Origin: Octopus bimaculoides
Taxonomy: Eukaryota
Assembly: GCF_001194135.2 (NCBI RefSeq)
Contig: NC_068982.1
Coordinates: forward strand, 45,052,145 to 45,116,144
Direction of reading: 5' to 3'
DNA: 64,000 nt
Shown piece after piece: positions 21,501 to 51,200 of the stretch (the stretch's first letter is position 1; every line of letters begins with the position of its first letter). The notes under the pieces are model-generated. The model searched no databases and was not told where the DNA came from. It was given only the letters and a program-made list of their open reading frames with translations. Position numbers and translations under genes: made by a program.

Positions 21501-24500
21501 ATTATTTGGAGGTCCTGCAAAAAGGTCACAGGTGGTGCTACTACTCCTCTAAAATAATTTTCTTCATTTTTGCTTTTTAGACCAGTGGATCTTGAAGCAG
21601 ATAAAGCTATAAATAATCCTTTCTACTATAGGCACGAGGCCTGAAATTTTGGGGAAGGGAGCAAGTCAATTACATCAACCTCAGTGCATAACTGGTACTT
21701 ATTTCATCGCCCCCCCCCTCCAAGGATGAAAGGCAAAGTCGACCTCAGTGGAAGTTGAACTCAGAATGTAAGGACGAACAAAATGCCACTGAGCATTTTG
21801 CCCAGTGTGCTAACAATTCTGCCAACTCACCTCCTTCATAAAGCTATAAATAACAGCATCTATATATCAAGTTTAAAAACCCTTTGGACAGAAAAGTTGA
21901 AGGTTGTCAGTGAGACTTGAATCCACATTTCCTGTAAATATGACAGGCATTCTATCAACGGACCACAGCAATCCAAATTTCTGATGTCAACAAAATTTAC
22001 AATAATACTGTGTTGTATTCATAAACACAAATGATAATTTCATTATGTAAATATTAAAATAGAAAATAGAACAACTTACCCCAAAACGGGCACGGAAAGT
22101 GAAGAATTGAGGAAATTCCCGCTGAAATTGTAAAACATAAATAAACTCATTATAAATCTCAACTATTTCTTCCTGGGTTTCCTATTCAGTTTATTCAAAT
22201 ATTTATGAAGAATTAGATATGGTTGAAAGTTATGTTCCACATAATGTGTGTGCATGGCACCTCAAGCACATGACTTCTACTATAGCGCCTGATCCAAAGC
22301 CTTGTGAATGGATTTGACAGATGGAAACTAAAACAAGCCCATCATATGTGTGTGTGAATGTGTATGTGCATGCATGTGTGTTTGTGTCTGTGTTTGCCCC
22401 CACCACCACTGCTCAACAACTAATGTTGCTTTGTTTAAGTCCCTGTAACTTAGCAGTTCGGTAAAAAGAGATCAATACAGTAACTACCAGGCTTAAGGTA
22501 AAAATAAGTACTGGGGTCAATTCATTTGACAAAAAATTCTTCAAGGCAGTGCCCCAGCATGGCAGTAGTTTAAAACAGATAAAAGATGCTCCAGCATTTA
22601 TCTCTTTTACCAGACCCCCAACCCTACCCCACTTACAGTGTGTCAACACAAGCTCAAGCTACATACTCAACATAAAGACAACATTAATCTACTAGAGAAA
22701 AACCAAGCTGAATAGATACACTTCTAATAAAAACTAAACATTCTGACAACATTTAACAACAGGATATTTCATTTTATTTAATAAATTAAAGAGAGGAAAT
22801 GTAATTTGGTTTACCTTAAACAGAACCAAGAAAGTTATTCTGCGTATGCCCTTTTCACTTAATATTTTCTCCTGAAATAAGAAAAGAAATGTATAAAAAT
22901 AAATTTTAGTTCATTTAAAAAGATATATATAACTGCTAGTATATTAAACTAATTATTTACACAGCATTTTTTTTTATATACCCAGGCCTATTCCCCATTT
23001 TTTTAGGAGTGGGTAGCCACAACAAGACACACACCAGGCATTCCATTCATTTCCCAGTTCAAAGAGGCAAGCCCCATTCTATGCTTGGGTCAAAGCATAG
23101 AATGCAACCCCCAATATCAGCAGCTGAGCCTGATAGTATATGCTGTGTGTGTGTGTGTGTGTGTCTTTCTCTCTCTCTCTCTCTCTCTCTGCAATATGTT
23201 TGGGCATGTGGAAATACTACAACACTTGGAAACAGGTAGGAGCTGCCAGCAGGAAAGGCATCTAGCTGTAGAAGATCTACCTGAATAAAATTTTGTCCTA
23301 CTATGTAGGCATGGAAAAAGTGGACATTAAAATGATGATGATGATAAATACAAAGACCATTTGGTTTAATAAAATAATGTGCCCATAATATAATAGATAA
23401 TTATCATCATCATCATTATCATTTAATGTTCATGTTCCATGCTAGCATGGGTTGGACGGTGTGACAGGATCCAACGGGTACAAACACTGCACTGTGCTCC
23501 AGTGTCTGCTTTGGTATGGTTTCTATGGATTGGTGTCCTTCTTAATGCCAACCACTTTACAGTGTATCTTGGGTGCTTTTTTCCATGCCTCAGACACTAG
23601 TGAGGTTGCCATGCATATCATAAGTTTACAAAATCCAAGGAGAGACAGGAGGCACCCTTATGCTAGATGGGGTTAAGGTATGAGAGAAGGGATTGGGACA
23701 GAGTGGGATTTTGTTTCAGAGGCACATGACTACTCACATTTATGGGAGAGAGTGAGAATGAATTAGTAGTTTCTCCAAAGAGATAGATAGCAGTGAAGGT
23801 GTATACAGGTGGCACCTCAAGGTACAAGGCAAGTAGAAGTGATTAGGGACAGAGCAGTTGAGAAGTTGGGGAGAGGGCAAGAGATAGAGGAAATAGGAGA
23901 GGAGAGGTAGACAAAATCTGTGAAGATTGGGTGGGGTTAATTTTTTCCTATGATAAAAATATTGGTTTTGTATTTATTTGAAGAAATTCTTCGTTATTTG
24001 AAGAGTCAGGTACTTTAGTGCAAGATCAAAATTTTTGCGGACTAAATTATTGACATTTCAATTCCCAACTGAACCAGTTACTTACATTTCGAATGCTTTA
24101 AAAGACATAAAAACACAACACTACACTTTTTTTAAATTTATTTCTCCAGCTATAACTTAGATGTTTTATACCAAAGTTTTTGAAAAATCCTTCATATTAC
24201 AATAAGAACCACCAACCTTCTCTTTACAGAACTCTTGAAATGTTTGAGCCAAAGTTTCATCATCCAGTTTCTCAGAATATTTGATAGACACATTGATAAT
24301 ATTAATAGGCTCATCAATGTCAGATGTACTCTATATGGGATAAAAGAAAATTCATTTACTGTTCATTTAGAACACACAACAACCAAATAATCGAGCAAAC
24401 ATGATGAGTTAGAATAGAATTGCAAAACAAAATATTACTATTAAAAAAGGATTGCATAACTAAAATTACTACTAACTTGTATAGAAACAGCATCTTCCAT

Positions 24501-27500
24501 TCCTGATTGTAAAGTCTTCTGTATTAAAGGAATTTCAGATGCATCTTCATCAGAAAACCTCAGCATTAATTCATCAAAATATCTAAAACAAACAAATTAT
24601 AAAAAAATCAATGAGAATGGGAAACCAGAATTACATCCCAATAATTTGTTCCCTTAACAAGAACTGAGTGAATTCACTTTGCAAGAACAATTTTTATAGG
24701 ATTATAAATTATTTATTGTTACTATAAAATAATTTACTTCTACAATAAGAATAACATTAAATGGTTTCATATTGGTTTCAAATTTTGGCACCAGGCCAGT
24801 AACTCCAGTGCTCAACTGGTACTTATTTTATCGATCTCAGAAGAATAAAAGGCAAAGCTGACTGAGGCAGAATTTGAACTCAGAACGTAAAGACAGACAA
24901 CATGCCACTAAGCATTTTGTCTGGCATGCTAATGATTCTGCCAGCTCACTGCCTTAAATATTCCAATATTTAAAACAAAAAAAAATACTTTTTTTAACCC
25001 TTTTGATACCAACCTGCTTGAGATTGCCCCAATTCTATAATACAAATTTCCTGTTTTAAAGTGATTTAAATTAAAAACCTTCTCTCAGACATGTTAATTT
25101 ATGTTTCAAACACTATCTTAAAAACGACTAAGTCATTTTACTAAATTATTCATTATTTTGAAAATTAACTGAAACAAAAGCAGTGTGTTTCAACAGAAAT
25201 ATGGTAACAAAAGGGTTAAAGATTAATAACCGCAAAAAGTTGGCAATTGTAATCAGAAAAATAAAAAGCTACCAAGGGCGATGACAATAAGAACAGATCA
25301 ATTAGATATGTCGGGCAAACATTTCAGTGGCAATGTCTCATTCAATACATAGTCTACAAAGTTACATCTATTACAGAGACACAGCTATCCTTTACATTTT
25401 ATGAGTTTTCTATGAAACATAAAAGCCTTTACTAGAGACACTTGTAGCATATCATACATAATAGCAACTTTCTCCACTGTATTTATCCTAGCTGTTCCTA
25501 ATGTTTTTAATCTAAATCTACGACCCACTAGCCTAAAACAGAATGAGATATTACTGACAACTAATAAATTCTGAGTTTATAACCATTTGCTTATGCATTT
25601 TCTTGGACACAATAAAGCCAATCTAATTCAAAATCTTTTGATTGACTGCCCTATTTTCTGAAGTTTGTGCTGCAGATGTTAGAACAATTGGCATCAAATA
25701 AGTTCCATACATTTTTCCAGCGATAACCTTTCAGATATATATTATATTCATTCAAGTGGATTAACATAACCATTAAAATTACTTTTGATAATGAAATTCT
25801 GATCATCAACTTTATCAGTAGCACTTACTATATACTTGAAAACAAAAATGGCCCATTCATTCATATGTTAATCTTATTGGTAAGGTGTATATATAAAGAT
25901 TACAGTGGTTGTTACATTCTCAAACATAATTGTGTCACTGACATAAATTACAATAATCCTCTTAACAATAAACCCAAAACCACAGTTCCACAATTAATAC
26001 ATATCTTAAATATGCCATTCATCTGACTGTTTTGTAAGAGCCCACCAGCCTACAGAAGAAACCTGGTTAAAAGCTATTTTCCAGGTCAACAAATTCAAAG
26101 CAAAGTGATTTATTCTGTATTAAGAGTCTCCTGCAGCTCTCAACTGAAATATGGATTTTGTGGTTTCATGTTCTGATACAAACCTAAACTGTAACTCTAA
26201 CCTGTACAAACTTTTAACTCTCTCAACTACTTTCAAAGCTTTGTTTATCAGTTTGAGATCACAATTGCTTGTCTCCAATACATCACTTTTACCTTTGAAG
26301 TAGTCGATGATATAGTGTCAGTCCTTGGGGATTGCACCTTTTAATAATAAGTATCCAGAATATAAAAAAAAATAGCTTCCAATTCATCAAACTGTACACA
26401 AGATTGTTTTGTGCATGTGTGTTGTGTGTGCATGCACACTTGTACGTTTAGTCATACAAAAACATAAGTGCTTCATACACCCTTGTATTTGAAGTGTGTA
26501 AAGTGTAATGTATGTATATATAGCAAGTGATATTAACAAACCATTCCTGAAAAATCCCCTTCAGCCAGCCTTGTTAGGGCAACAGTACATTGTTACCAAC
26601 TTTGTTAGGGCAACAGAATATTGTTGCCCAAATAGTATACTAAGTTAATAAGATAAAAGGAATAAAATAGGTAACTCATTAGATATTTCTTTCAACCCAT
26701 TGATGTATGTATTATCACTCAGATGAAGCTAGTAGTAAACTTCATTTAGTTACTTACTCTCTGAGTTCTGCAAATGATGAGAAAGCAGCAACAATACCCA
26801 TCCTCTCAGTGAGCATGGAAGACTCATTATGATCCCATTGCTGTTTTATATCATCTTTTGTTATGCTGCCATCAAACCGCATTACCATCAATCTGGAAAA
26901 GAAAAATATATAAAGAAGAAAATCCATTAGAACACTCGTCAACACAAGAACACCAACTAGCATTCTCCAACAGGTTGATCCTTTATAGTGTTTCAATGAA
27001 AAAGCCATATTTTTAAAACAGATACTGTCAATGATGGTAATTAAGATATTGCTATATGTTACATACATTTGTAGAGCCTTCTAATAATATTTAACTCACA
27101 TTGGCTGATAGTTTGTGTTTTATTGCTTCAAATAAAAGAAGAGAAAAACAAAATATTTTGCCAACCTATCAATCAAGCACAGCACTACTTATTAAATTCA
27201 TCAGTGAAGTCAAAGACACTACATCATCTTCCTTGTTAAACTTCAGAACCAAATGTACTTCATCTTCTTTCTATCTGTATTACCAATAGCAACATAAGAC
27301 ACTGCTTCCCTAAACTTAATGCCTAAATACCATCTCTCACACCTCTTCCTGTCGTCCTGAATGAACTTCATACCTCTCAACTCTGTCCTAAGCACTTTGC
27401 CAAATTCTGAATCCCTATAACTGAAGCCATCTGAAACCCCTGCCTTATTTAAGTTTACTCTTACACATACATGCAAATAACCGACTTTCAAAAATTCATG

Positions 27501-28235
27501 AAGATTACCAAGCACTGTGCCTCTTTACCATCAACTTAGGAATATTCTGGAAACATCAAGAACATCACTCTTCCCCCACCTCAAACTAAATATAACTTCT
27601 AGGTCAGGAGATGACACGTCTAGTAATATCAGTTTCAAATTTTGGCACAAGGCCAGCAGTTTCAAGGTAAAGTTGACCCCAGTGGTATTTAAACTCAGAG
27701 TGTAAAGATGAACAAAATGCTGCCAAGCATTTTGCCAGTAGCACTAATGATTCTGCCAGCTCGCCACCTTGAAATGTCTTGTAATTTTCTTATAGGATTG
27801 TTATAAATGTCAACTTTCATATATTCAGTATGAATTAACAACAGTACAATACATTTTGTTTAGCAACGAGTTCCTCAAGAGCCATAGATGAAAGAAAATA
27901 TATTTAGCCAAACTAATGCTTATGGATTAAATGTTTCTTCACTTTCAGACTTATTTTTGGGTTCTTTATTTTAAGTGGCCAGACAGTTCATTTCAATTTG
28001 TCCACCTGCTGGAATATAAGTAATCACAAATGGCATTTTTATATCTAAGCCTCACCAAGGACCCACTAGTGAACTGAATCTAGGGTTATAATTTGGATTT
28101 AGTACTTGCATTATCAACAGTATCCAGCTAACACTTCAATGTTGTTTTATTTCACTTTGAGTTCTATGTGATCATACTTAACCATTTCTGGTATCATACA
28201 AGTTGTTATACCTTGAGAATCCTCATAATTAAATC

Positions 28236-28266
<31 letters not shown>

Positions 28267-28287
28267 CATATGTATGTATGTGTGTGG

Positions 28288-28333
<46 letters not shown>

Positions 28334-29151
28334 NNNNNNNNNNNNNNNNNNNNNNNNNNNNNNNNNNNNNNNNNNNNNNNNNNNNNNNNNNNNNNNNNNN
28401 NNNNNNNNNNNNNNNNNNNNNNNNNNNNNNNNNNNNNNNNNNNNNNNNNNNNNNNNNNNNNNNNNNNNNNNNNNNNNNNNNNNNNNNNNNNNNNNNNNNN
28501 NNNNNNNNTTATCATTATTTAACGCCTGTAAGGCGGCATGCTGGTAGAAACGTTAGCATATTGGGTGAAATGCTTAGCAGTATTTTGTCTGTTTTTATGT
28601 TCTGAGTTCAAATTGCGCCGAGGTCGACTTTTCCTTTCATCCTTTCGGGGTCAATAAATTAAGTACCAGTTGGGTACTGGGCCGATCTAATCGACTGGCC
28701 CCCTCCCACTAAATTTCAGGCCTTGTGCCTAGAGTAGAAAAGATTATTTAACATCTGTTTTCCATGCTGGCATGGTTTGGACAGTTTGACAGGAGCTGGC
28801 CAGGCCAATCATTGCACCAGGCTCCATTTTCTGTTTTGACATGGTTTCTATAGCTGGATGCTCTTCCTAACACCAATCACTCAACAGGGTGTCTTGGGGA
28901 CCATTTTATATGGCACCAGGATATATATATTTTTTTACTTGTTTCAGTCATCTGACTGCAGCCATGCTGGAGCACCGCCTTTAGTCAAGCAAATCGATCC
29001 CAGGACTTATTCTTTGTAAACCTAGTACTTATTCTATTGGTCTCTTCTGCCGAACCGCTAAGTTATGGAGACCTAAACACACCAGCATCGTTTGTCAAGC
29101 AATGTTGGGGGGACAAACACAGACACACAAATATATACACACACATGTATG

Positions 29152-29196
<45 letters not shown>

Positions 29197-29665
29197 TGTA
29201 CATTTAAACACATAAGAGATGGCCATAATCGGACATCTAAACCACTAAAGGGAGTAGCTAAAATACAAACCACAATTAGGGGTAATTTCGAAAGGGAATG
29301 AAAGGGATTTTAACTACTCCTTCTAGCGGTTTAGATGTCCAATTATGGCCATCTCTTATGTGTTTAAATGTACACTGTATATATAATGAATAATATATAG
29401 TCTATTGACTAGTTTTTCTACACGCTAGGCCACGGTGGTAAAAAATTTCTAAATAATATTTTACCACCCTGAAATTTATTAATATATATATGTATGTATA
29501 TATAAGACGGGCTTCTTCCAGTTTCCCTCTACCAAATCCACTCACAAGGCTTTGGTCAGCCCGAGGCTAAAGTAGAAGACATTTGCCCAAGGTGCCACAC
29601 AGTGGAACTGAACCCAGGACCATGTGGTTGGTAAGCATGTTACTTACCACACAGCCACACCTGTG

Positions 29666-29702
<37 letters not shown>

Positions 29703-32700
29703 GACATGCTTCTTTCAGTTTCCGTCAACCAAATCCACTCACAAGGCTTTGGTCAGCCCGAAGTTATAAGAGAAGACACTTACTCAAGGTGTCACACAGT
29801 AGGACTGATCCTGGAACTATGTGGTTGGGAAACAAGTTTCTTACCACACAGCCATGCCTGCACTGCACATGTGTGTGTGCGTCCACACACACTTGCACAT
29901 ACACATCAATGCCTTTGTGGCTGTGTTTGTCCCTCAGCAACTGATGTCAGTAGAAAGAGACCAATAGAATAATGACTGGACTTCAAAAAGAGAAACTGGG
30001 GTCAAATTCTCCAACTAAAACCCCTTCAAGATAGAGCCCAGCAAGGCTGCAGTCCAGTGACTGAAACAAGTATAAAGAATAGTCTTCCTTGTTCTTTGTA
30101 AGTCAATTCAGTTATAAACAACATGTGACAATATTATTGGGTTGGTTCATAATTATTGTGGCTCTTTTTTCAACAAAAACAATAACAACATGCAACAAAA
30201 ACATCTTTAAATGATTATTCTGGAGCATATTCACCATCTACTTCAATTACTGCTTCCCATTTGCTTAGCAGATGGTCAGACCGTCGTTCAAAGATGTTTT
30301 TGTTAAATATTGTTATTGTTTTTGTTGAATAAAATTTGTTGAAAAAAAAAAAAATCGCAATAATTATGCACCAACCCAATACTATGAAACTTATGAGATG
30401 AAACTAAATAAAAGATGGCTTGTGAATATGCAGGAGCTTGAACATGGCTACAAGAACCTGGTTAAAGTGAAAGAATGCTAAGAGATGAGTTCATCAGCAG
30501 AGTATCAATGTCCCATCACCTCCACCACCACCACCACCCGCTGACAGGTACAACAAAGATAACAGAACATGTAAGAAATAACATCTGAATGGAAGGTGCA
30601 TGCTGGGAAAGGAGGTGGTACAAGGTGGTAATATAGGCTACAAAATGGAGCAAAGTCAAAACAAAATAAGGATGCACAGGGGACAGATATCATCTAGGAA
30701 GGTGAGACAACAGTGAATCATGTTGAAAGGTGATAGGTTGTGAATAAACTATAAATATTTATTCAATAATAAATTGATACATGTATTTGTGTACAGATGA
30801 TAATATCAGGTATTAGATAGCTTTCCAAATCTAGATATTTGCAATAATTCTATGACTAAATACTAATTATTAAATTATGCACACGTTTTTGCAATAGGTA
30901 TCTTTTCTACTATAAGCACAAGGCCTAAAATGTTGAGGGGAAATGGGTTAGTCAATTACACCAATCCCAGTATTCAACTAGTACTTACTTAATGGACCCA
31001 AAAAGGATGAAAGTGAAAGTTGACCTCGGTAGTATTTGAACTCAGAATGTAAAGCCAGAAGGAATACTGCTAAGTATTTTGTCCAGCATGATTCCACCAA
31101 CTCAAGAATACGCAGTAAATATAGAGAACACTTAGTAATCCAAGCCATGTGGGAAAAGGAAGGGAATGGGAGAGGGAGCAATAGCAATAGAAAGACCAGA
31201 AACAATGGCTGAGAGGTGGGAGTGGGGCAAGAGTATAATTGAGGAGAAGTACTCAATAACCTTAGGGTGTGTACATTTGTGATAGTGAGTGAAGATGGGA
31301 AGAGAAGAGACAACAAGGACATCAGATAGACCAGAAAGGGTAGATAAAAGAACCAAGAGTATAATGCAAAGGCAGGGGTTATTGGAGGAGGAGTCAGATG
31401 GAGCAGGGTGATTGACAGTAGCAGAAGTGGACAAAGGTTAACAGGAGTGATGAGACAGATGTAAAGGTAAATGACAGGTGGTACCAGAAGTGGCCAAGCA
31501 GAGAGGGAGAGGAAGAGGGAGATGGTATATTGGGTAGGGAGTTGAGGGTGGTCTGATGCTGTGTCATATACACAGGCCTAGTGAAGGACAAAGGAGTTGG
31601 AGTGATGAGGATGATGTCAACACAAGTAGTGGAGAGATGGAGAGTTATGAGTGATAAAGAGACAAACAAGGAGAGAGGGTGAACAATATGGGGATAAATG
31701 ATGCAAAGTAAAGAGGGTAGCTAATATTAGGCTTTGCCAGGTACAAAATATTTCAGCCTCTAAATATGACAGTTCTATATTTAAAAGATGAGGAATTATG
31801 TACATTATTTACATTTAACAGATATTTGTCCTCATCTTGTTTGTTGTTAACATAAGGCTGATATACCCTCCAGGCTTCATCAGGTGTCTTGGGGAAATTT
31901 AGAACCAACCTGGGTTCTCATTCCTAAGGTATTTTTTGGTGTTATTATTATTATTCAGGTCACTGCCTGGAATTGAACTTGGAATCTTGGAGTTAGTCAC
32001 CCTTACTCTTAACCACTATGCCATATGCCGGGGCATATGGTGTAGTGGTTAAGAGCAGGGGCTACTAACCCCAAGATTCCGAGTTCGATTCCAGGGAGTG
32101 ACAACAACAACAACAACAACAGCAACAGCAACAGCAACAGTAACAGCAACAACAACAAAAAATACCTTAGGAATGAGAACCCAGGTTCGAAATTTCCCCA
32201 AGACACCTGATGAAGGCCGGAGGGTATATCAGCCGAAACGTGTTAACAACATACAAGATGAGGACAAATATCCGTCAAATGTAAATAATGTACTCTAAAT
32301 ATTACCCTCATACCAGGGTGTGTTTTGCTGTGGGTGGACAGATCATCACTAATCAGTATGGTCTTTTGTTGTCTGCTCTGCAAAATGCCGCATCTTCAGT
32401 CCAGTCTTTACCACTTCATCACAATTCTTCTTTCATCCCCCACCACCACCACCACCATCTACATCGGCTCTCCCTAGTCCAGCAGTCATCCCCTAAACAT
32501 CTCACATGCCCATATTAATGCGACCTTCTCTCTTGTATACTATACCTGATTCTTCTTCACTGAGATATATCTCTCAGATTATTTATACACTGTTCATATG
32601 CCCCCAACATTATCAGCAACATTTCAGATTTCAAAAAATACTATCATAAAATAATTGCCACACACATTTTATCCAGAAATCCAGAAAATTATACATACAA

Positions 32701-35700
32701 ACCATTTTTACCTGTTTTACCTGACCCCAAGCTCTACACCAACTACCTCTAATAATCCTAGAAAAACAGAGGCTGTCATACAATAAGCCCACTTTGCCAG
32801 TCTTTTCTGTGGCCACATAAGCTTTAGATCATCTTTGAATATTCTAAAGAGAAATACAAGGGCAACAGCCTATATGTTGACATGTAGGGAAGCTCTGCAT
32901 CCCCTCGTGCCAACCATTGACTAACAATGTATATAGTAATACTTGTGGAACAGCAGCATAGTCGAGATGGTATGTTTTCTTCTCTTACTCTTGTTTTTTG
33001 CAAACATCTTCAAAATAACTTTCTAAAATGAAATTCCATTATGCAGCTGAGGAGTACATTTTCATTGTACATTCTGTTGTGTTCTCACTACATGAATAAA
33101 TGGAGCTTGTATGAAACGTACATACTGCTATAACCTATTGAATTTTTGTTGCTTATCTTCAAATTTTATTCACCAAATCTCTTGATTTTGTTTTTGGTTT
33201 TTATCCTACCAAATTCTGGTGCCTCAAACATTTTAAGTACCACATTTAATCTTTTGATTAAATCTATATTATTATAGTAATACTTGAGTAGATTGAACCA
33301 GGGTATATTGTAAATACTAGATCAATAACATTTGATCAGGTACCACCAGAACATAAATCTTCTCAAGAAGGAAGTTATTCAACAGCTACAACAGTGGATG
33401 AAAAATGAATGAAAACAGGTGAGGGTTAGGACAATGTTTAAGACAGAGACGACAGTTAGTGAGAAATGGAAACAGAGTTTCATGCCAAAGATGTTAGAAG
33501 TTGAAGGACAGAAAGTGTGAGGTTAGCAGGGCTACATCAAGAAGAACAAGGTTCGTAGAAAGCAGGAATTAAATATAATGGTAAGAAAAACTGGTTTTTT
33601 GGGTTTTTTTTTTTTTAATTTTAATGCAAATATGATGCCTTAGGGAGAAAAGTTGGCTACACATATACCTGATACTCTGAGGGAGATGAAAAATTAAATA
33701 TGAAAGAATCATTTAGAAACAAAATGCAGTGACCTGCATTTAAATTAGAACAGGAGGAGAAAACAGTAGTTAAATGTAGAAATGAAATACTAAATACAAA
33801 CTTCAAACTATAGATATAGAAATAGTATCACTGTAAATGCATTAGATTACATTACTATATCAATACGTGCATGTATGTGTAAATATATTAATACATTATG
33901 AGACAAACAATTATAATGTAAATCACAACAATAACTATTCAGAAATGATATGATTATGCACACAGAGCAGGATGCCAAAATGCATTTTGAAATAATACCT
34001 AAGTTGCAATAAATCTATTTGAAAAACATGATGATAAGAATGAGCTTCTCCATTGCTATTGTTACAACGCCTCAAAGGCAAGGAACAGAGTTCTGAGTAG
34101 GTAGCAGTGACGGGGTGGATGGTGTCATCAAGGATTTGTGAGAGAAATGGATAGATCAGGAGTTCGCAACAACTTTTTATTTATGGACCCCTTTGATTAC
34201 TATTTTATTCTTGTGGACCCCTTGGCCATTCAATGTTTAAAAACTAGTTTTAATAGAAACATCTTTCAAAATTCCTATTTTGTTTTTCACAAATTAACTT
34301 GTGTAAGTAGAACTATGTAAAATGTCAGAGAAAGGAACCTAACTGATTCTTGCAACACATATCAATAAATACACCTAAAGCAAAATTTTTTCAGGGGCCT
34401 ATAAAATACTAATGTAGATCCCCAATTTACTATTTTGTTATGTGGACCCAAACCCCTCGTATATGAACCCTCAAGGGCCATATGGACCCTAGTTGAGAAC
34501 CACTGGGATAGATAAAGTGAATGAAGTAGTCAGAGTGTATGATAGGGTACTTAAGCTTAGACTAGTCTTGGAAAACATCACAGCATTTATTTCTGCATAC
34601 ACTCCACAGGCTGGCTTGGCATATGAACAGAAAGACCTTTTCTAACATACACACACACATGGATACGTTTTGTGGATTATGTAGGGATGATAAAATGATA
34701 GTATCAGAATGCGAAATGTAGCTGATGTTCTCAAATTAAATTACTTCATTTATACAATTGTTCAATTTCAGCAAAAATAGAACTTCCCCATTCGCTGACA
34801 CTTTAAATCTGAAATAAGATATCTCAGAAAGATGCATTTGTGTTTGCATATACATGTATTGTTGTCATCCTCATTCTACATCTATTTTTCTATGCTGACA
34901 TATGTAGTATGGTTGTCATAGCAACTGGCCATTGATAGCATAATGATATTTAGGCAAAAATATTTGCTAACACATCAAAATACAATTAGGCAACAATATA
35001 TCCAATTTGATGAATTGCCACAAGAACAAAAAATGAAAGAGGGACTTAGAAAGTGTATCGCACATTTTAATTATTCAAAGTGGGATCAACTTTTATTCAA
35101 TCTCTATTTTACTGTCTACAATGAGGTCATTTAATAAATGTGACAGATGTTTAAAGCTCTGATGTATTTGTAGTAACGTAAATGAAATACATAAAGATAA
35201 ATGTTAACGTAAGGTTATTATTTTAAAGCAAGGTTAAGAATAACAACAGAATGTTTACTGAAGGAACGATTCAATATGAAAAACAAAGTTAAACATTATA
35301 ATTTATTTTGATGGCAACTTTAGCTTTCACATGATGGTTTATTCAACTAGACTGGTTGAATAAGTCATTAAGTGAACATATAATTAGTATCTTCCTCATG
35401 TTTATCAGAACTCCTAAGTTTTATGTGAAGCTTCTTTTTGCATCTTAACAACACTAACCAAAAACCCAAACAGATAAGAAATACAAAACTCATCATTAAA
35501 CTAATTCAACAAATCAAACCAGAAAATATAATTCAACCACATCAGAGAATAAACCATTCAAGTTCATATTTGTCACCACTTTATTACTTAAAACGCAACT
35601 ATTCTTACAAAACATGGTGATGTGAATGCACAGAAGTGAAAGAAGAGACATCATGTGTGCTAGAAAAGAAAATATATTTTTAAGAAATTTTGTTGTAGAG

Positions 35701-38700
35701 AAATTACTGCGTGCTATTAAACAGTCTGAACTTGAAAGTGTTCAGAAGAAAAGATTTAACTTGGCTGATCTCTCTAGTATAAATCCAGTTAGAATGGAAA
35801 TAACTAACATTTCATAGGCATTTTATAGACATATAATTCTTTTTTAGTAACAGAGGGCTAAGTAATTTTTTTTTTTTTTCTTTTTAAACCTAATGTAGCA
35901 CTGAATAGAAAAGAAGACTGTAGCCAAGTGTGAAATCAAGAACCAGTTTGTTAAAGACCATACAGGATGCAGAGTTAGGTAAGAGAAATATATTTTGAAA
36001 ACCAAGCATGCGTAAGAGAATATGATGAAGAATTATCCCGTGCAAAAGTTAAAGGCTTATCCTTTCTGAGAAATAGAATAACAAAAATAGCATTTATTTC
36101 TCTCTCTCTCTCTCTCTTTCTCTTTTTCATTATCAGAATTATTCTTAAAGTAAAACTTTTCCACAAAATATCTCTACTGAAAGACATAAGACTTAAGAAC
36201 AAATTAACTTATACTTTTAATTCATTTTTAAAAATTTCATCTCTCAATGTTGCTTCTCAAATTGTCAACCAAAAATCTACAATAAAAACAGGTATAGTTA
36301 TTGAATTAATCTAAATATACCCCTGGTACTTAATTTATCAACTGCAGAGGAATGGAAAGTTAAGTTGATTTCAGCAGAATTTGAACTAAGAATGTAAGAG
36401 ACATAACAAAACACTGAGTCTGGAATTCTACAGTTTCTGTCACTGTTGTCCTATTAGATTTCTTAATTTGACTAACATTTTTCTAGGACTTCTACAACAG
36501 CAATTAACATATAAAAGTATTAAGTGAAAATAATTTTCTTATCCTTTTACCCTTATCTCCTTTAGATCTCTCTCCCTTTTGTATCAATATACAACTAGAC
36601 AACAAAGAAATTTATAATTTCATTAAGGACAGCCTTTCATGTGAGTAAATGCACTGGTCTGCTCTTTCAAATATATCAAAGCTAAAGCAATAGGATAGAT
36701 GAGGGAAGCAGAGGAAATCACTTACCCAGGATGAGTCAACCTGAAAGTCAATAGGATCAAACAAAAAAAAAAAAGAAAACAAATAAAATAAAATATATAT
36801 ACATAAATCACAATTAATGATGAAAATGTTAATATGGCTGAAAATATATTGGCTTCATATTTTAATTTTGAGTCATAAGTTTGGTACTGGGAACCGAAGA
36901 CATCTAAAACAGCAATGGGTTTTGTTTTATATTAGAAGTTTCATTAAATATTTCCATCATAATGACTTTTCTTTCTTTTTTTTTAACCAACCAAAACATG
37001 ATAATATTAAAACAAAATAATATGATAGGAGAATTAAATAATGATCCTAAATTAGTTAAAATTATAAGAAATATTGTGTCTATGTTATACAGATAATGGC
37101 TAGAGCACTTTCTGCACTACCTGGAATGTGGATCTCCTTTGTTCCACTATTATCAGCAGTACAGATTTAATATACGAGATACATGAGTTAGCAAAGAGGA
37201 CTAATAACAGCTTGTATCAAGTTTGTTAAAGAGAAATCAAAGATTTTACGAACAAAAATAAATAGTAGATCAACATGCAGGAACAATATTGAGATATTCA
37301 GTAGCCTTGCTTCAATAGAGGTAGAAGAAAATGAACTGATGAAGCTTATAGCTGGACCAGAAAGATGACAACAGTAACAACAGCATACAATGACCACATC
37401 CACAAAACAGTACTTAAAGACAGACTGACAGAGGATTACTCCATATAATAGACACTTGGCAGCTACAGGACTAGAAATGACATTAGAAAATGTGAAGAGA
37501 AGCTTAAATTAAATCAAATTAAATGCTGAGTTTATTTGACAATCATGTAGAAAATCAATATTTGTAACATCAAACAATTTCTAAATGCATGAAAAAAATA
37601 AAAATTATTTACATCTCTTTTTACAACTAAATGCTTCACATCTATTTGGGAAGAGAAATGGAAATGAGATGTTCAACATCATTAATTGATGATATAAATG
37701 AAGCATTTCTCATTGGGAACCAAAAATTTATTGAGATAACAGTAACCATCATAATAATGATAATAAAAATAATATTTCTATCTTCAAACCAAAACCACAA
37801 ATTTTTGTGGAAAAGTATAGCCAATTGTGAATGGCACTTATAGTAACTATCTGGAAATATGAAAAGAAAAATTCAACTCCAGTAAGATGTGAAGGAAAGT
37901 AACAAAATATTGGTCTCAAATTTTGGGACAAAGCCAACAAGTTCAGGGGAGAGGGCAAGTTGTTTACATTGACCCCAGTGCCCAACCAGTACTTATTTTA
38001 TTGACCCCCAAAAGGATGAAAAGCAAAGCTGACCATGGCAGAGTTTGAAACATTAAGACAGATGAAATACTGCTAAGCATTTTGCCCGGATACTGCAGAA
38101 TATTGCAAGGCATTTAGTCAGGCACTATAACATTCCTGCCACTCAGCTGCTACAGCAACATTAATATTATCATGAAGGTAATTAAGAAATTTATTGTGAA
38201 TTTGTGAAAAACATACCTGTTGGGGTGAGATGTTGGCAAAAGAAACTTGAATTCAACAACACAGAGACTATTCAAGAGTTGATCATGACGCAAACACACA
38301 AGTTCATAAGCAGTATAGGCTCTTCGGACATACACCTTAAATATTGGAAAGGTAAACAAAGAAAATAAAGGACAAATACATAAAATAGTGGTTTAATTTG
38401 GGATAAAAGAAAATACCATGATTAGATAAAGTGGTCATACTGCTCAATCAAACAGAAGTAAATAGTGAAGAGAAATGATTGTAAATGTAAATCAGCATGA
38501 GATTTAATGAGAGATAAGATCATTTACACCCTTCCACACATATATTTGCTTCCTTTAGACTGCAGTTATGCCAAGGCACCACTTCCTGGGACAGACGGGG
38601 GAGGGACCCTTTTTATATCAAAAAGTTGCATTAAATTAAATGCAATCCAAAAAGGCTGGATATAAATATGTGGACAAAATGCACATTAAATGATATCAAT

Positions 38701-39509: not shown

Positions 39510-42500
39510 TAATAATAATAATAATAATGATAATAATAATAATAATAAATAATAATAATAATTCTTTGGACATATATATAAAATGTGTATGATTAAACAC
39601 TGCCTGAAAGGAATTTAGCTTTAAGCAAATAGTTGAAGATGTAATATCTTAACTAGAGCTGCATAATCAATTTTCAGAAACTGATGATTTTACTCTAGAA
39701 AAGAAATCAAAAAAATCCTCAATGTTTAAATAGATGAAAGGTAAAAAAACTCAGTTACCTGAAGGTTCTCAGGGCAGAAATCGTGACCAGATATATTAAT
39801 AGCAGACAGAAAGATTGATTCCATTTGATTATGTCGCAGTTCAAAGGCAGGCTGATGTGCAGCAATCAGAATCTTAAAAAAGAAATGGCGAATATTGATT
39901 AACTGATAAATCAAAACAACCTGGAAGCTAAATGGTACAGTCACAGCTATTTTGTCATTATAGAATAGCTGCAACTCCTAATCCCAAAGTTCTGCATTTC
40001 AACAACTACAACATATAATTAGTTCATTTTCTCACTTAACTAACTGCAACAATCTTCCCTTTTGATTTCATGCAAGCACTTACTTTTTAAATGATCCAAA
40101 ACATTGTGACAAGAAATGGCTTAACCCTTTAGCATTTAAACCAGCCATATCCAGCTAAAATACTCTGTTTTATCTTCAGATCCACCAGATCTGACCTCTC
40201 ACACATACTCTACAATGTCATTTTAAAAATAAACAGTCACATCATTGAAATCTCAAAGCTATAAGACAGTGCATGATCACTTCAAAACAAAACAAATAAA
40301 TACTACATTTGAAAAAGTAATCTGAAAGCTAAAGGGTTAAACCAGCCATATCCAGCTAAAATACTCTACCACCTTCATGTTCAAACCAGCCAGATCTGAC
40401 CTATCACACCTACCCTACAATGTCATTCTAAAAATAAACAAATACATCATTGAAATCTCAAAACTACAAGATAGTGCATGATTAATTCAAAATAATGTGA
40501 ATAAACAAGCATTATATTTGACTGAGTAATATAAATGCTAAAGGGTCTAATGACCCAAGATCCTGCACCACTCACTTTTAATTCCACCAATAAAAAAAAA
40601 TAATAAAATCGATAACTTACCTGTCGTGCTCGGAGAGCTACTTTGGCATTTTCAGTTTTGTTCAGAGTGGTCAACTCACTGAGAATCTGTGCTAGGTCAT
40701 CAGTGAGACCAGATTCATTTCCACACAGGTATTCCTGCAAAAAATACTTTATCAGTTAATTTTCTATTTTTTTTTAAATTTCATTTAATACTTAATATAT
40801 ATTTCTTTTTACAGGTACATTGCATGTTATTCAGCAACTGCTGAAGATCACAGTAAGCCATAAGAATATTAATTTTAAAAAGCAGAACTTAATTCTAGAG
40901 TACTAGAGTATTAACATATAATGCATTAACACTCTCTTTAGTACAGTATTTCATAAAAAAAAAAAAATTAAGCTTTACAGAATCATTTACCACCAAAGCT
41001 TTGATAGTTTTAAAAAGTGTAGTGTTTAGTGACTTGTATCCACTTCACCAAACATTTGGTAACAATATATTTCAATTCTTTAAACCTTTTGACAGATCTC
41101 CTTACAAACTCATAACTCAAGCAGAATAAGCTATTTACTCTCTTTCAACTCACAGATTTCCAAGATATCTACTAATAAACAACTCTTGAGGATAAATATT
41201 CCCTAATATTTATCAAATATCAAAATTGTATATAATTTTTACCAATACAGAATAAGCACAGTAAAGAAAATTTTTGTCTGCATGGGCATCAAATCAATGA
41301 CACAACAAATCTGATTCTTGGTAGTCCTGTGGAACATTTCACAAAGATTTTCTAACAATATTACAGAATTGGTTTGCATTAAACTGGAGTTCAAATTATT
41401 TGCTACAGGAGTCAATGAACTGAGATTGCCACTTTGTAAGTTAACTTTCATATCCACTGACACACTGCATCGCCAAAGACAAGACATCGACTTCTCAACT
41501 ACCCATTAAGCTATCCTCACTCTTGGTTCAAATGACAGAATTCCAATCAGTTTTTGTGAACCAAATTCCATTCACAAAGCTTCATGCATCTCAAGGCACA
41601 GCATGGTAGGATTGAACCTGAAGCCATGTAGTTGTGAAAACTACTTAACCACAAAATTATGCCAACATCCGGGAACTTGGACATCATCATTCAATGTCCG
41701 CTTTCCATTCTGCACAACTACTAAATCCACTCACAAGACTTTGGTCAGTTTGGGGTTTTAATAGAATATACTTGCCCAAGCTGACACACAATGAGATTGG
41801 TCATATTATAATTTTTTAATAGAATATGAAATGTTTAGCAATATGTAATACAAAAAAAAAAGCAAAATAACTGGAAAATAAAATAAGAAAACACCACAAA
41901 CAAATAGCCAAAATCATATTGGCTTCCAGTGGTATGTAAATGCCTCACACATTTAAACTTCACAAATGAAATGAAAGAGTGTAAGCATGCCTATGTGTAA
42001 CACAACTTTACTTACTATGAGTAATATGACCAGTTCATTCTTTTCCGCAATTGCAGAATGAGAAAAAATTGTAGCTGTAACTGCACCCATGTCATCCTTG
42101 TGTCTTTCTCGAACTTGGGCAACACATTTATCATAGTGACCTACAAAGTGACCAAAGACATAATTAGGCAATTAGTTCATACTATTAATTACAGCATTGG
42201 AAATGAAAGACTGCACATTTTAGGGAATAATATATATATATATATACACACATGAACGGGTGCTAAAAAAGTTCTTGGCTTTAAGAGTATTACGAAAGGC
42301 CTGGTTGGAGGCCAACCTTCTGAGTTCTTTTACAGGGCTTAGAAAAACTGAAGGACCATTGCAATAACCGCATGAATCTGAAAGGGGAATATGTTCAATG
42401 AAATCACAATTAACTGATCCTCCTGTATTTTCTTTTACCCAAAGCCTGAAATTTTTCAGCATCCCCTTGTATNNNNNNNNNNNNNNNNNNNNNNNNNNNN

Positions 42501-43228
42501 NNNNNNNNNNNNNNNNNNNNNNNNNNNNNNNNNNNNNNNNNNNNNNNNNNNNNNNNNNNNNNNNNNNNNNNNNNNNNNNNNNNNNNNNNNNNNNNNNNNN
42601 NNNNNNNNNNNNNNNNNNNNNNNNNNNNNNNNNNNNNNNNNNNNNNNNNNNNNNNNNNNNNNNNNNNNNNNNNNNNNNNNNNNNNNNNNNNNNNNNNNNN
42701 NNNNNNNNNNNNNNNNNNNNNNNNNNNNNNNNNNNNNNNNNNNNNNNNNNNNNNNNNNNNNNNNNNNNNNNNNNNNNNNNNNNNNNNNNNNNNNNNNNNN
42801 NNNNNNNNNNNNNNNNNNNNNNNNNNNNNNNNNNNNNNNNNNNNNNNNNNNNNNNNNNNNNNNNNNNNNNNNNNNNNNNNNNNNNNNNNNNNNNNNNNNN
42901 NNNNNNNNNNNNNNNNNNNNNNNNNNNNNNNNNNNNNNNNNNNNNNNNNNNNNNNNNNNNNNNNNNNNNNNNNNNNNNNNNNNNNNNNNNNNNNNGCATC
43001 TCATGTGCCACCCGCACAAGAACCAGTCCAGGGGCACTGGCAACGATCTTACTTGGCTTGCCGGGTCTTCTCACGCACAGCACATTTCCAAAAGTCTCGG
43101 TCAGTAGTCATCGCCTCGGTGAGGCCCAATGTACGAAGGTCTTGCCTCACCACCTCAGCCTAGGTCTTCCTGGGCCTACCTCTTCCACGGGTTCCCTCAA
43201 CTGTTAGGGTGTGGCACTTTTTCACGCA

Positions 43229-48296: not shown

Positions 48297-51200
48297 ACCG
48301 ATGAGCTTCAATATCCATGTAGGAGCCATTCATTAGAACAAAGTAACTTGCCAGTCCTGTCCTCACAACCTATCATACAAAAACAAAAAAATCACATATT
48401 TATTTTTTATTTGATTCAGTTACTAGAGTATAACCATGCCAGGGCATGAATTTTTAGTTGAATGAACCAACAGCACCACTTATTTCTTTTTTGGATTTAT
48501 TCTATCGTCTCTTTTGCCAAACCGCTACATTACGGAGACATATACACATCAACACTGGTTGTCAAGTGATGGTGGAAGAAAAACACAGATACAAAGGCAC
48601 ACACACATAGACATAAATGAGCTTCCTTCAGTTTCCAGCTACCAGATCCACACTCACAAGGCTTTAGTTGGCTCGAGGCTATAGAAGACACTTCCCCAAT
48701 ATTAAAAAGAAATTAAAGAATAAATAAAATTACTGCTAAAAACATTGTTTTTAAGTGCATAATTTAAATTGAATTTGAACAAATAGTATTGTTAATCAGA
48801 ACTAAAAATGGGGCTTCCTACAAAACTTATTGTTCAGCAATTCATTTAAGGACCATGTGGTTTCAGTAATATATTGCCCACTGTGCAACATATTGGGCAA
48901 GTGTTTTCTGCTTTAGTGGTATTTGGTTAAACAGAACCTGTTCAGAATCTTATTGTATGTCTACTGTTCATCTGTTTCATTTAATATCAGTTTCCTCCAT
49001 GGTAACATGATTTAGACGGTGTGAGAGAAGGGTGAATTATCAAGACAGGATTTTTAAGGCCATTTTTAAGGTACATGACATACATACAGACACACAAACA
49101 TATACACACAAAATGAATGAGATGTTAAACTGAAAGACTACTCATTGCCAGAACCTTAGAATGTTTGATTCTATAGATCAGTGTGTATACGAGTAAATGT
49201 ATTTTGCATACAACTAAACTTACAAAATAACAAATAATAAGTGAAAGGTAAAAACCATACCAAAAGAATTTGGCATTAGTTACTTGCTAGTGCTTTGCTT
49301 TAAACAAATTTCATGTCAATGCCACATTAAAAGCACCCAGTACACATCGAAAAGTGGCTGGCATTAGGAAGAGCATCCAGCCATAGATATCAAGCCAAAT
49401 CAGAGTGGAACCTGGTGCAGCTCACCTACTTGCAAACCTCTGGTCAAATTGTCCAACCCATGCCAGCATGGAAAAATGGATGTTAAAGGGGATGATGATA
49501 ATAATAATGATGATGATGATGATGAAATCCCACTTGCTTTGAAACATATGTCCATTAGGGTGACAAAATAATTCTTCTTATCTTCTATTATAATGAACAA
49601 GGTCTGAAATTTTTAGAGGAGGGTCTATTTGATTACATCGACCCCAGTGGTTGACTAGAACCTATTTCATTGACTCTAAAAGGATAAAAGATAAAACTGA
49701 CTTTGGCCACATTTGAACTCAGAATGGACAGAGCTGAAATAAATGCTGCTAAGCATTTTGTCCACTATGCTAACAACTCTGTCAGTTCACCACCCTTGGG
49801 TCAATGAAATAATATTGGTTTCAAATTCTGGCACAAGGCCGACAACTTCGGGGGAAGGAGTAAGTTGATTACATACATTGACCCCCAGCACTCAACTGGT
49901 ACTTATTGTATCAACCCCAAATGGATGAAAGGTAAAGTCAAACTCAGCAGTTGATAAAAATAATATTAACATAAACAAATCTAAAGCAGTTCCTTACTGT
50001 CGTAACATATTTCACACCATCGTAAATGAACTCGACATCCACTTTATTTTTCAGAGAATTTGCAGGAAATATCTGGCCTCTGAAAAAAAGAAAAGCAAGG
50101 AAAACTTTAGCTACTAACATCTGCAAAAAAAAAAAATCGTTAATTTTTTTAATTTTCAAAATTCTGAAAGAGATGAGAGACAGAGGAGAGAAGAGAGAGA
50201 AGAAAAGAGAAAGAGAGAGACAGTGTGTGTGTTTGTGTGTGTGTGTGTGTGCGTGCATGCATACATGCATGCGTGCATGTGTGAGAATGAGAGGAATAAA
50301 ATAGGTCATTATACTGTTTTACATTCATTTATTTAGTCTTGTATGGTTAGGATGATCATTTCATTGAAACAATTGCTTTTGCAGCTGAATGTCTTTTCTA
50401 TTGCAAACCATTGAACAGTAAAGTAGGAGTAAAACCTTCCTTTGTTCAGTTGAGCAAACTAGAAAAAGCGTTCAACACAATGACTTTTGAACTTAACGAA
50501 CTGTGTTCTATACTAACTTCATCATAAACTTTCAACCACTGACTATAGAGAAAGAAAAATTTCAGTCTCTAAATTTTCTCAATAACAACACATGTAAACA
50601 ACTGATGAATTAGTAGCACATATATTGGATACGTCAAAACTTTGTCATTAAAACCTGTATGATAATACAGTGGCAAAAAAATAATAACAAAGATGTTAAT
50701 GGCAATTTCACTAAACCAGAGGCAAATTGCCTCAGTATGCAAGTGGTCTGAAGTGTTTTCTTTGCACCCTAAACTTGCCAACAAATAAGAAAGAGATGTT
50801 GATAGGGTATATGCATCAATCTGATACAAATGTGATATTTGCAACATAAATATCAGTAATAAAATAATATAAAAGGCAGTACAAAGTAACTTAATATCAT
50901 GAAGAAATGAGCAAAAGCAGGCAAGAAGGAGATTAATTCTCCTGCAATAATCAATATTTCTAAAAGTGGGATTTATGAAAATAATTATATGTTGACTTTG
51001 ATTAAATATATGAATCGAATGATGTATACTAATGGCAACAGTTCAGGTTTTAACAACATAAACACTATTTTCAGGAACACAATTTGAAATTTGCAGATCA
51101 AAATTTACAATAAAAGAAAGGTAGGTAAGCTTATACATCAAGACAGCATTAGAGGACCAAAAATTCCATATGGAATGCAGCAGGATTTGAAAAGATAGTG

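What the first reader, a model, noticed from the sequence alone, without database searches (positions are those of the whole stretch)
36726..36740. In-frame 15-nt microexon at the position of the mammalian ACACA 24-nt cassette
Seen: a long U tract, acceptor gactttcAG, exon GTTGACTCATCCTGG and consensus donor GG|GTAAGT. It is phase 2-2 and converts HPN-R-LMVMR to HPN-R-LTHPG-LMVMR. Recalled: mammalian ACACA inserts 8 aa at the same junction, affecting phosphorylation at Ser1200. Inference: conserved or convergent regulated splicing in the ACC regulatory loop, likely to be missed by automated annotation.
Basis: partly seen in the sequence, partly recalled or inferred. Interest (0 to 1): 0.7.

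Follow-up and report, generated by a model that had tools for sequence, protein, structure and literature searches.

The report
Unverified 15-nt pseudo-exon in octopus-like ACC
A 15-base stretch that looks like a tiny in-frame exon really does sit in the intron of an acetyl-CoA carboxylase gene where mammals have a regulated 24-base exon, but its splice signals are only slightly better than chance, and no transcript or related genome could be obtained to show that it is ever used.

Summary
The sequence is exactly as described. On the minus strand it reads U-rich tract, ...gactttcAG|GTTGACTCATCCTGG|GTAAGT (window 36740..36726). It lies in an 11,324-nt phase-2 intron of an animal acetyl-CoA carboxylase (ACC) gene, between exons ending ...LPTSHPN(R) and starting (R)LMVMRFDGS. 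Inclusion would give HPNR-LTHPG-LMVMR with no stop.

The positional claim holds. This intron opens the regulatory loop of the central domain, and the mammalian 8-aa cassette (Acaca exon 28) maps to the same junction.

The splicing claim could not be tested. No transcript and no orthologous intron was reachable with these tools.

The intrinsic signals are mixed:
- The donor is good, at the 60th percentile of this gene's 40 real donors.
- The core acceptor is weak, at the 10th percentile. It rises to the 30th when the 95-nt AG-free zone and the upstream U tract are counted.
- There is no UGC motif.

An equal-or-better in-frame candidate is expected 0.06-0.15 times in this intron by chance, and about 0.3 times across the window's ACC introns. 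Ten other in-frame candidates pass minimal thresholds in the same intron.

LTHPG shares neither length nor sequence with the mammalian GNIPTLNR. My best reading is a chance pseudo-exon (about 0.65). A real alternative microexon remains possible (about 0.2).

The parts
36726..36740 (-). Candidate 15-nt cassette GTTGACTCATCCTGG. If included it adds LTHPG between HPNR and LMVMR.
   Evidence: sequence and frame verified; unique in the window; not part of a repeat copy.
36741..36800 (-). Putative 3' splice region. It holds AG at 36742..36741, branch-point-like TTGAT (A at -17) and TTGAC (A at -8), and a U12 run at 36774..36763. There is no other AG for 95 nt upstream and no UGC motif.
   Evidence: anatomy; the -20..+3 PWM scores 3.49 bits, the 10th percentile of real acceptors; with the AG-free zone and upstream pyrimidines it reaches the 30th percentile, and about 1% of intronic AGs score as high.
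36720..36725 (-). Putative 5' splice site TGG|GTAAGT.
   Evidence: 9.24 bits, the 60th percentile of this gene's real donors; 4 donors this strong occur in the host intron.
26893..38216 (-). Host intron, 11,324 nt, phase 2, containing a 175-N assembly gap at 28334-28508. The candidate lies 1,476 nt below the upstream exon and 9,833 nt above the downstream exon.
   Evidence: Its own sites are strong: donor CAG|GTATGT at 10.9 bits and an acceptor at 15.6 bits, the best in the gene.
38217..38335 (-). Constitutive ACC exon encoding [39 protein letters not shown](R).
   Evidence: Exon-fragment ORFs from other animals also end at HPNR, so the intron position is old.
26758..26892 (-). Constitutive ACC exon encoding (R)[44 protein letters not shown], the regulatory-loop exon.
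   Evidence: It is 95.6% identical, with no gaps, to a related species' contig (L001), against 84-89% for the flanking intron.

Best explanation
The 15 nt are most likely a chance pseudo-exon. An AG that happens to follow a U-rich, AG-poor, low-complexity stretch lies 15 nt upstream of one of the few GTAAGT hexamers that an 11.3-kb AT-rich intron contains by chance. The normal mRNA joins exon 38335..38217 directly to exon 26892..26758 (HPNR|LMVMR), using the strongest acceptor in the gene. The 15 nt are then removed with the intron, or included only at noise level.

Shown: the sequence, the frame, the gene model, the splice-score ranks and the chance rates. Inferred: that it is not used.
For: The core acceptor is weak, at 3.49 bits and the 10th percentile of 40 real acceptors. 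The U tract lies upstream of the only branch-point-like motifs that are close to the AG, rather than between them and the AG, and no UGC motif is present.

Pairs that are equally good or better occur on the antisense strand as often as on the sense strand, 3 vs 3 in 52.8 kb. The expected number of in-frame stop-free candidates of equal quality is 0.057 from shuffles, about 0.14 from real-intron PWM rates, and about 0.07 from the combined model, for this intron. It is about 0.3 for the window's ACC introns.

Eleven in-frame stop-free candidate cassettes in the same intron pass the weakest-real-site thresholds. This one ranks second of the eleven, and the set includes a 51-nt and a 24-nt candidate.

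The skipping form already has a loop whose N-terminal part is as long as in yeast ACC (yeast alignment). LTHPG has no resemblance to the mammalian cassette. No alternative loop-like coding segment is present in the intron.
Against: The donor is a full consensus GTAAGT. The AG is the first AG after 95 nt, whereas real acceptors here have a median AG-free zone of 48 nt and intronic AGs a median of 9 nt. Only about 1% of 5,000 background AGs reach its extended acceptor score.

The chance expectation for this particular intron is below 0.15. The intron is the very one that carries a regulated cassette in mammals. Under the phmmer alignment, human ACC1 has exactly 5 extra residues (gnipt) at the insertion point. 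The region is unique sequence, not a repeat.
Confidence: 0.65

Rival explanations
1. It is a genuine, alternatively included 15-nt microexon. A distant branch point upstream of the U tract, perhaps with a pyrimidine-tract-binding regulator, would define the first downstream AG, and the strong GTAAGT donor would complete exon definition. Inclusion lengthens the N-terminal arm of the ACC regulatory loop by LTHPG. [quoted passage not shown] It would be an independent (convergent) counterpart of mammalian Acaca exon 28.
For: The junction matches the mammalian cassette. The donor is consensus. The AG-free zone is 95 nt and the extended acceptor score is reached by about 1% of background AGs. The candidate is in frame, has no stop and would sit in a flexible loop. 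The chance expectation is 0.06-0.15. The 5 added residues match the 5-residue gap relative to human ACC1.
Against: No transcript and no conservation evidence was obtainable. The core acceptor is weak and there is no UGC motif. The insertion point is 8 residues upstream of the nearest Ser (RFDGS), so it lies outside a -5..+4 kinase recognition window. The mammalian cassette, by contrast, ends 2 residues before Ser1200. Length and sequence differ from GNIPTLNR. The prior for any given intron to hold an unannotated microexon is low, a few percent (my estimate).
Confidence: 0.2
2. It is a cryptic exon used at a low level with no function. This would be splicing noise, or a decoy site that assists processing of the long intron, for example stepwise removal of the intron in two pieces.
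For: The host intron is long at 11.3 kb, with the candidate 1.5 kb from its 5' end. The donor is strong and the AG-free zone is long.
Against: It is not a recursive splice site. The sequence after the AG is GTTGAC, a poor donor, so a junction CAG|GTTGAC would not be re-spliced efficiently. There are no data on transcripts.
Confidence: 0.1

Closest known systems
Mammalian ACACA (ACC1) exon 28, the 24-nt / 8-aa cassette upstream of Ser1200 (Kong et al. 1990; Barber et al. 2001; PMC11494077)
   Same: It lies in the same intron, immediately after the exon ending ...LPTSHPN(R), phase 2, at the N-terminal end of the central-domain regulatory loop. It is also frame-preserving and very short.
   Different: It is 15 nt / 5 aa (LTHPG) rather than 24 nt / 8 aa (GNIPTLNR by my reading) and shows no sequence similarity. 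The mammalian cassette ends 2 residues before the regulated Ser, whereas here the nearest Ser is 8 residues away. Mammalian inclusion is documented experimentally. Here there is no expression evidence at all.
Bilaterian neural microexons dependent on SRRM3/4 (eMIC domain)
   Same: The length is under 30 nt and a multiple of 3. It would insert into a surface loop next to a regulatory site. It has a strong 5' splice site, a long pyrimidine tract and a long AG-free zone.
   Different: The UGC motif between the pyrimidine tract and the AG is absent. ACC is not a typical neuronal target. Inclusion has not been shown.
Intronic pseudo-exons (decoy splice-site pairs) that are common in long animal introns
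   Same: An AG..GT pair with plausible scores, found at a rate similar to that on the antisense strand and in shuffled sequence.
   Different: It scores better than most such pairs, ranking second of 11 in-frame candidates in this intron, and it sits at a junction with a known cassette in another phylum.

Membership tests
Alternative cassette microexon (<=30 nt, frame-preserving) | Flanked by AG and GT with splice signals in the range of real sites | tested here: inconclusive
   The donor scores 9.24 bits (60th percentile). The acceptor PWM scores 3.49 bits (10th percentile), or the 30th percentile with the AG-free zone and upstream pyrimidines.
Alternative cassette microexon (<=30 nt, frame-preserving) | Length a multiple of 3, with no stop in the host frame | tested here: met
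   15 nt; AG|G TTG ACT CAT CCT GG|A = R L T H P G.
Alternative cassette microexon (<=30 nt, frame-preserving) | Present in mature mRNA in at least some tissue | not testable with these tools
   No transcript-derived protein spans the junction in the protein collection; only genomic exon fragments were found. No RNA-seq access.
Alternative cassette microexon (<=30 nt, frame-preserving) | Exon and flanking intron conserved in related species | not testable with these tools
   One related species is present only as ~1.25-kb contigs (L001/L002) over the downstream exon. Nothing covers the candidate.
SRRM3/4 (eMIC)-dependent neural microexon | UGC motif shortly upstream of the 3' splice-site AG | tested here: not met
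   There is no TGC in the 120 nt upstream.
Orthologue of mammalian ACACA exon 28 | Same intron position and phase | tested here: met
   Phase-2 intron after HPN(R). Human ACC1 reads HPNR-GNIPTLNR-MSF. Mouse exon 28 encodes 8 aa directly N-terminal of the central phospho-cluster, and the morpholino target tttaattacag|AGGG fits. The exact mammalian boundaries are partly my inference.
Orthologue of mammalian ACACA exon 28 | Same length and related peptide | tested here: not met
   15 vs 24 nt; LTHPG vs GNIPTLNR, with no similarity.
Orthologue of mammalian ACACA exon 28 | Cassette abuts the regulated serine (Ser1200 motif) | tested here: not met
   After the insertion point the protein reads LMVMRFDGS, and the first Ser is 8 residues downstream. 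phmmer against yeast aligns GSITKDD with AVS(1157)VSD, the site that aligns with human Ser1216, not Ser1201.
Recursive splice site / RS exon | 3' splice site directly followed by a good 5' splice site (AG|GTRAGT) | tested here: not met
   The sequence is AG|GTTGAC.

The most novel reading that the evidence does not exclude
The 15 nt are a real, tissue-regulated microexon that cephalopods evolved independently in the same intron where mammals evolved ACACA exon 28. That would make the N-terminal arm of the ACC regulatory loop a recurrent target for tuning fatty-acid synthesis by splicing.
Probability: 0.18. Interest if true: 0.5.

Novelty: not a real feature. Interest (0 to 1): 0.22.

Why it matters
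If the microexon were real, it would be a neat case of convergent splicing control. Two distant phyla would each insert a few residues at the same point of the phospho-regulated hinge loop of acetyl-CoA carboxylase, the committed enzyme of fatty-acid synthesis. It would also show that annotation pipelines miss such exons.

As it stands, it is a plausible-looking splice-site pair of the kind that long AT-rich introns produce by chance about once per few tens of kilobases. It should not be added to an annotation without read support.

Tried and rejected
(1) Transcript evidence. A protein search with the inclusion-form peptide spanning both junctions returned only genomic exon fragments from various animals, and none spanned the junction with or without LTHPG.

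(2) Orthologous intron.
- The one close relative in the collections (Logan runs SRR11869394/84, 83.6% nt identity) covers only window 27730..26607.
- Two word-index searches with every stop-free segment around the candidate found nothing, the second even at E<=10.
- A full HMMER scan with the ORF at 36787-37017(+) found nothing.
- An exact 22-mer scan of JGI metagenomes gave 0 hits.

(3) A distant animal's ACC locus (L003, compact gene) was fetched, but it is too divergent to say anything about this intron.

(4) Transposon exonisation. The A-run on the + strand could have been a retroposon tail, but the 36600-36760 region has no other copy in the window. The nearest SINE-like copy is at 36324-36416. 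Rejected.

(5) A mutually exclusive or alternative loop exon in the intron. tblastn with the human, yeast and octopus loop peptides gave nothing below E = 0.1. Rejected.

(6) Structured RNA or tRNA in the window: none.

(7) The original papers on the rat and sheep cassette (PubMed 1974251 and 11719287) are not held. A search for the peptide strings found no paper. A paper that mentions both ACACA and microexons concerns alternative first exons only.

Full report
THE WINDOW. Six-frame translation and tblastn place an animal acetyl-CoA carboxylase (ACC) gene on the minus strand of the whole window, from the biotin carboxylase domain (about 62,800) to the carboxyltransferase domain (about 400). 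The tblastn guide was a human ACC1 sequence that I recalled from memory and used only as a guide. I refined 44 exon junctions by spliced alignment. The assembled 1,260-aa product has no stops. Its central part matches human ACC1 chains in the PDB at E = 1e-98, which validates the model independently of the recalled guide. A related species, seen in Logan runs SRR11869394 and SRR11869384, is 83.6% identical at the DNA level over one exon and its flanks. Base composition (30-39% GC in 2-kb windows), intron sizes and repeats fit a cephalopod, but the species is not established.

THE OBSERVATION. The described sequence is present exactly. On the minus strand it reads ...gttttcttttttttttttgtttgatcctattgactttcAG|GTTGACTCATCCTGG|GTAAGTgatt, with the 15 nt at 36740..36726. 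The host intron runs 38216..26893 (11,324 nt, including 175 N at 28334-28508). The upstream exon (38335..38217) ends CCC AAC AG|gtatgt. The downstream exon (26892..26758) begins A TTG ATG GTA ATG CGG. Skipping gives HPN-R-LMVMR. Inclusion gives HPN-R-LTHPG-LMVMR, in frame and without a stop.

SPLICE-SIGNAL QUALITY. Position weight matrices (PWMs) were built from 40 confident junctions of this same gene and scored leave-one-out.
- The donor TGG|GTAAGT scores 9.24 bits, the 60th percentile of real donors.
- The acceptor (-20..+3) scores 3.49 bits, the 10th percentile.
- The only branch-point-like motifs near the AG (TTGAT with A at -17, TTGAC with A at -8) lie downstream of the U tract, which is not the usual order.
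- No other AG occurs for 95 nt upstream, and no UGC motif is present.
- Real acceptors in this gene have a median AG-free zone of 48 nt, against 9 nt for intronic AGs in general.
- A logistic model of PWM score, AG-free zone and upstream pyrimidine content puts the candidate at the 30th percentile of real acceptors. About 1% of 5,000 background AGs reach that score.

CHANCE EXPECTATION.
- Using the two PWM thresholds, the host intron holds 45 acceptors and 4 donors at least as good as the candidate's.
- AG..GT pairs spaced 3-30 nt number 3 on the sense strand (including the candidate) and 3 on the antisense strand of 52.8 kb of introns.
- 300 dinucleotide shuffles of the host intron give 0.33 pairs and 0.057 in-frame stop-free pairs.
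- With the combined acceptor-plus-donor score, 2 other pairs in 85 kb (both strands) equal or beat the candidate. That corresponds to about 0.07 in-frame stop-free candidates expected in this intron and about 0.3 in all the window's ACC introns.
- In the host intron, 11 in-frame stop-free candidate cassettes of 3-150 nt pass the scores of the weakest real sites, and this one ranks second.

The configuration is therefore better than the average decoy, but not beyond what an 11-kb AT-rich intron yields by chance roughly one time in ten.

POSITION IN THE PROTEIN. phmmer against PDB chains aligns the octopus ...[22 protein letters not shown] with human ACC1 ...[27 protein letters not shown]. Hunkeler et al. 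2016 (PMC4833862) describe a regulatory loop in the CDC1 part of the central domain. It carries yeast Ser1157, which aligns with human Ser1216, and also human Ser1201. They note that Ser1201 is only moderately conserved. In the yeast alignment, octopus GSITKDD pairs with yeast AVS(1157)VSD, and the stretch from (H/F)P to that site has the same length in both. This suggests that the vertebrate segment holding Ser1201 and the cassette is a vertebrate expansion. That conclusion is my inference from the alignments.

THE MAMMALIAN CASSETTE. [quoted passage not shown] It cites Kong et al. 1990 and Barber et al. 2001. The reverse complement of its morpholino sequence is tttaattacAG|AGGG. Read as the 3' splice site of exon 28, this gives (AG)A GGG = R-G, which fits HPN-R-G-NIPTLNR of the human sequence. 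Together with my recollection that ACC2 reads HPNR-M..., this places the cassette (GNIPTLNR) in the same phase-2 intron.

The two inserts do not look homologous.
- They differ in length, 15 vs 24 nt.
- LTHPG and GNIPTLNR show no similarity.
- The mammalian cassette ends 2 residues before the regulated Ser, whereas the octopus insertion point is 8 residues from the nearest Ser (RFDGS).

One curiosity remains: under the human alignment, the 5 added residues would exactly fill the 5-residue gap.

DIRECT EVIDENCE COULD NOT BE OBTAINED. The protein collections hold only exon-level ORFs from genomic contigs of animals. Nothing spans the junction in either form. The one close relative is present as contigs of about 1.25 kb that cover the downstream exon only. 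Three searches designed to catch any called ORF on an orthologous contig around the candidate found nothing, and an exact scan of JGI metagenomes found nothing. The candidate is not part of a repeat. No structured RNA or tRNA is nearby. The intron hides no alternative loop-like exon.

JUDGEMENT. I combined a prior of a few percent that a given long intron holds an unannotated microexon (my estimate, raised somewhat for this loop) with a chance rate of 0.06-0.15 for a decoy of this quality. I also assumed that a real microexon would usually look at least this good. On that basis the odds favour a chance pseudo-exon. My estimates are:
- unused or noise-level pseudo-exon, about 0.65;
- real regulated microexon, about 0.2;
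- low-level cryptic use without function, about 0.1.

The test is cheap: junction-spanning reads in existing RNA-seq, and alignment of the orthologous intron in other cephalopod genomes. In the relative seen here, intron is 84-89% identical with many gaps and the coding exon is 95.6% identical with none, so intact retention of the 23 critical bases would be informative.

Noticed in passing
window 28334-28508 and 42473-42995: Two assembly gaps (runs of 175 and 523 N). The first lies inside the host intron of the candidate, so a small part of that intron is unread.
   Followed up: partly
window 51694-51866, 60148-60320, 28570-28740, 37913-38080, 21620-21796, 30917-31077, 57223-57369, 49818-49950, 24801-24915, 36324-36416 and others: A SINE-like interspersed repeat of about 175 nt, with 15 or more copies at 70-84% identity in both orientations within the ACC introns. 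The related species' contig L001 (bases 1-173) carries one too.
   Followed up: partly
window 57495 (minus strand), intron between exons ending ...FEEMEK and starting AAVTLAK: The alignment to human ACC1 is gap-free only with a GC donor (GAAAAG|GCAGGT). A GT donor 6 nt downstream (GCAGGT|GTAATT) would add two residues (AG). This is a possible GC-AG intron or a pair of alternative donors.
   Followed up: no
window 48369-48298 (minus strand): A short ACC exon encoding (V)[22 protein letters not shown] (human [24 protein letters not shown]) was missed by tblastn and found only by eye. The preceding exon ends VKYVTT|gtaagg near 49985.
   Followed up: partly
window 26892-26758 (minus strand): The octopus-like regulatory loop is about 11 residues shorter than the human one and lacks the VAS-VSD motif around human Ser1216. 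phmmer pairs GSITKDD with yeast AVS(1157)VSD. It is unclear which residue, if any, is the regulatory phospho-acceptor here.
   Followed up: partly
window 35659-35609 and 34398-34375 (minus strand): Two other in-frame, stop-free candidate cassettes lie in the same intron. One is 51 nt (acceptor 11.0 bits, donor 3.6 bits). The other is 24 nt (acceptor 6.3, donor 4.9), the same length as the mammalian cassette but unrelated in peptide (PLKKFCF).
   Followed up: no
L003 (ENA ERZ25069191 contig ctg557694_10x_l), 2600-13500: A whole ACC gene of an unidentified small-intron animal spans about 11 kb. Its exon also ends at ...LPTSHPNR, which shows that the intron position is shared widely.
   Followed up: partly
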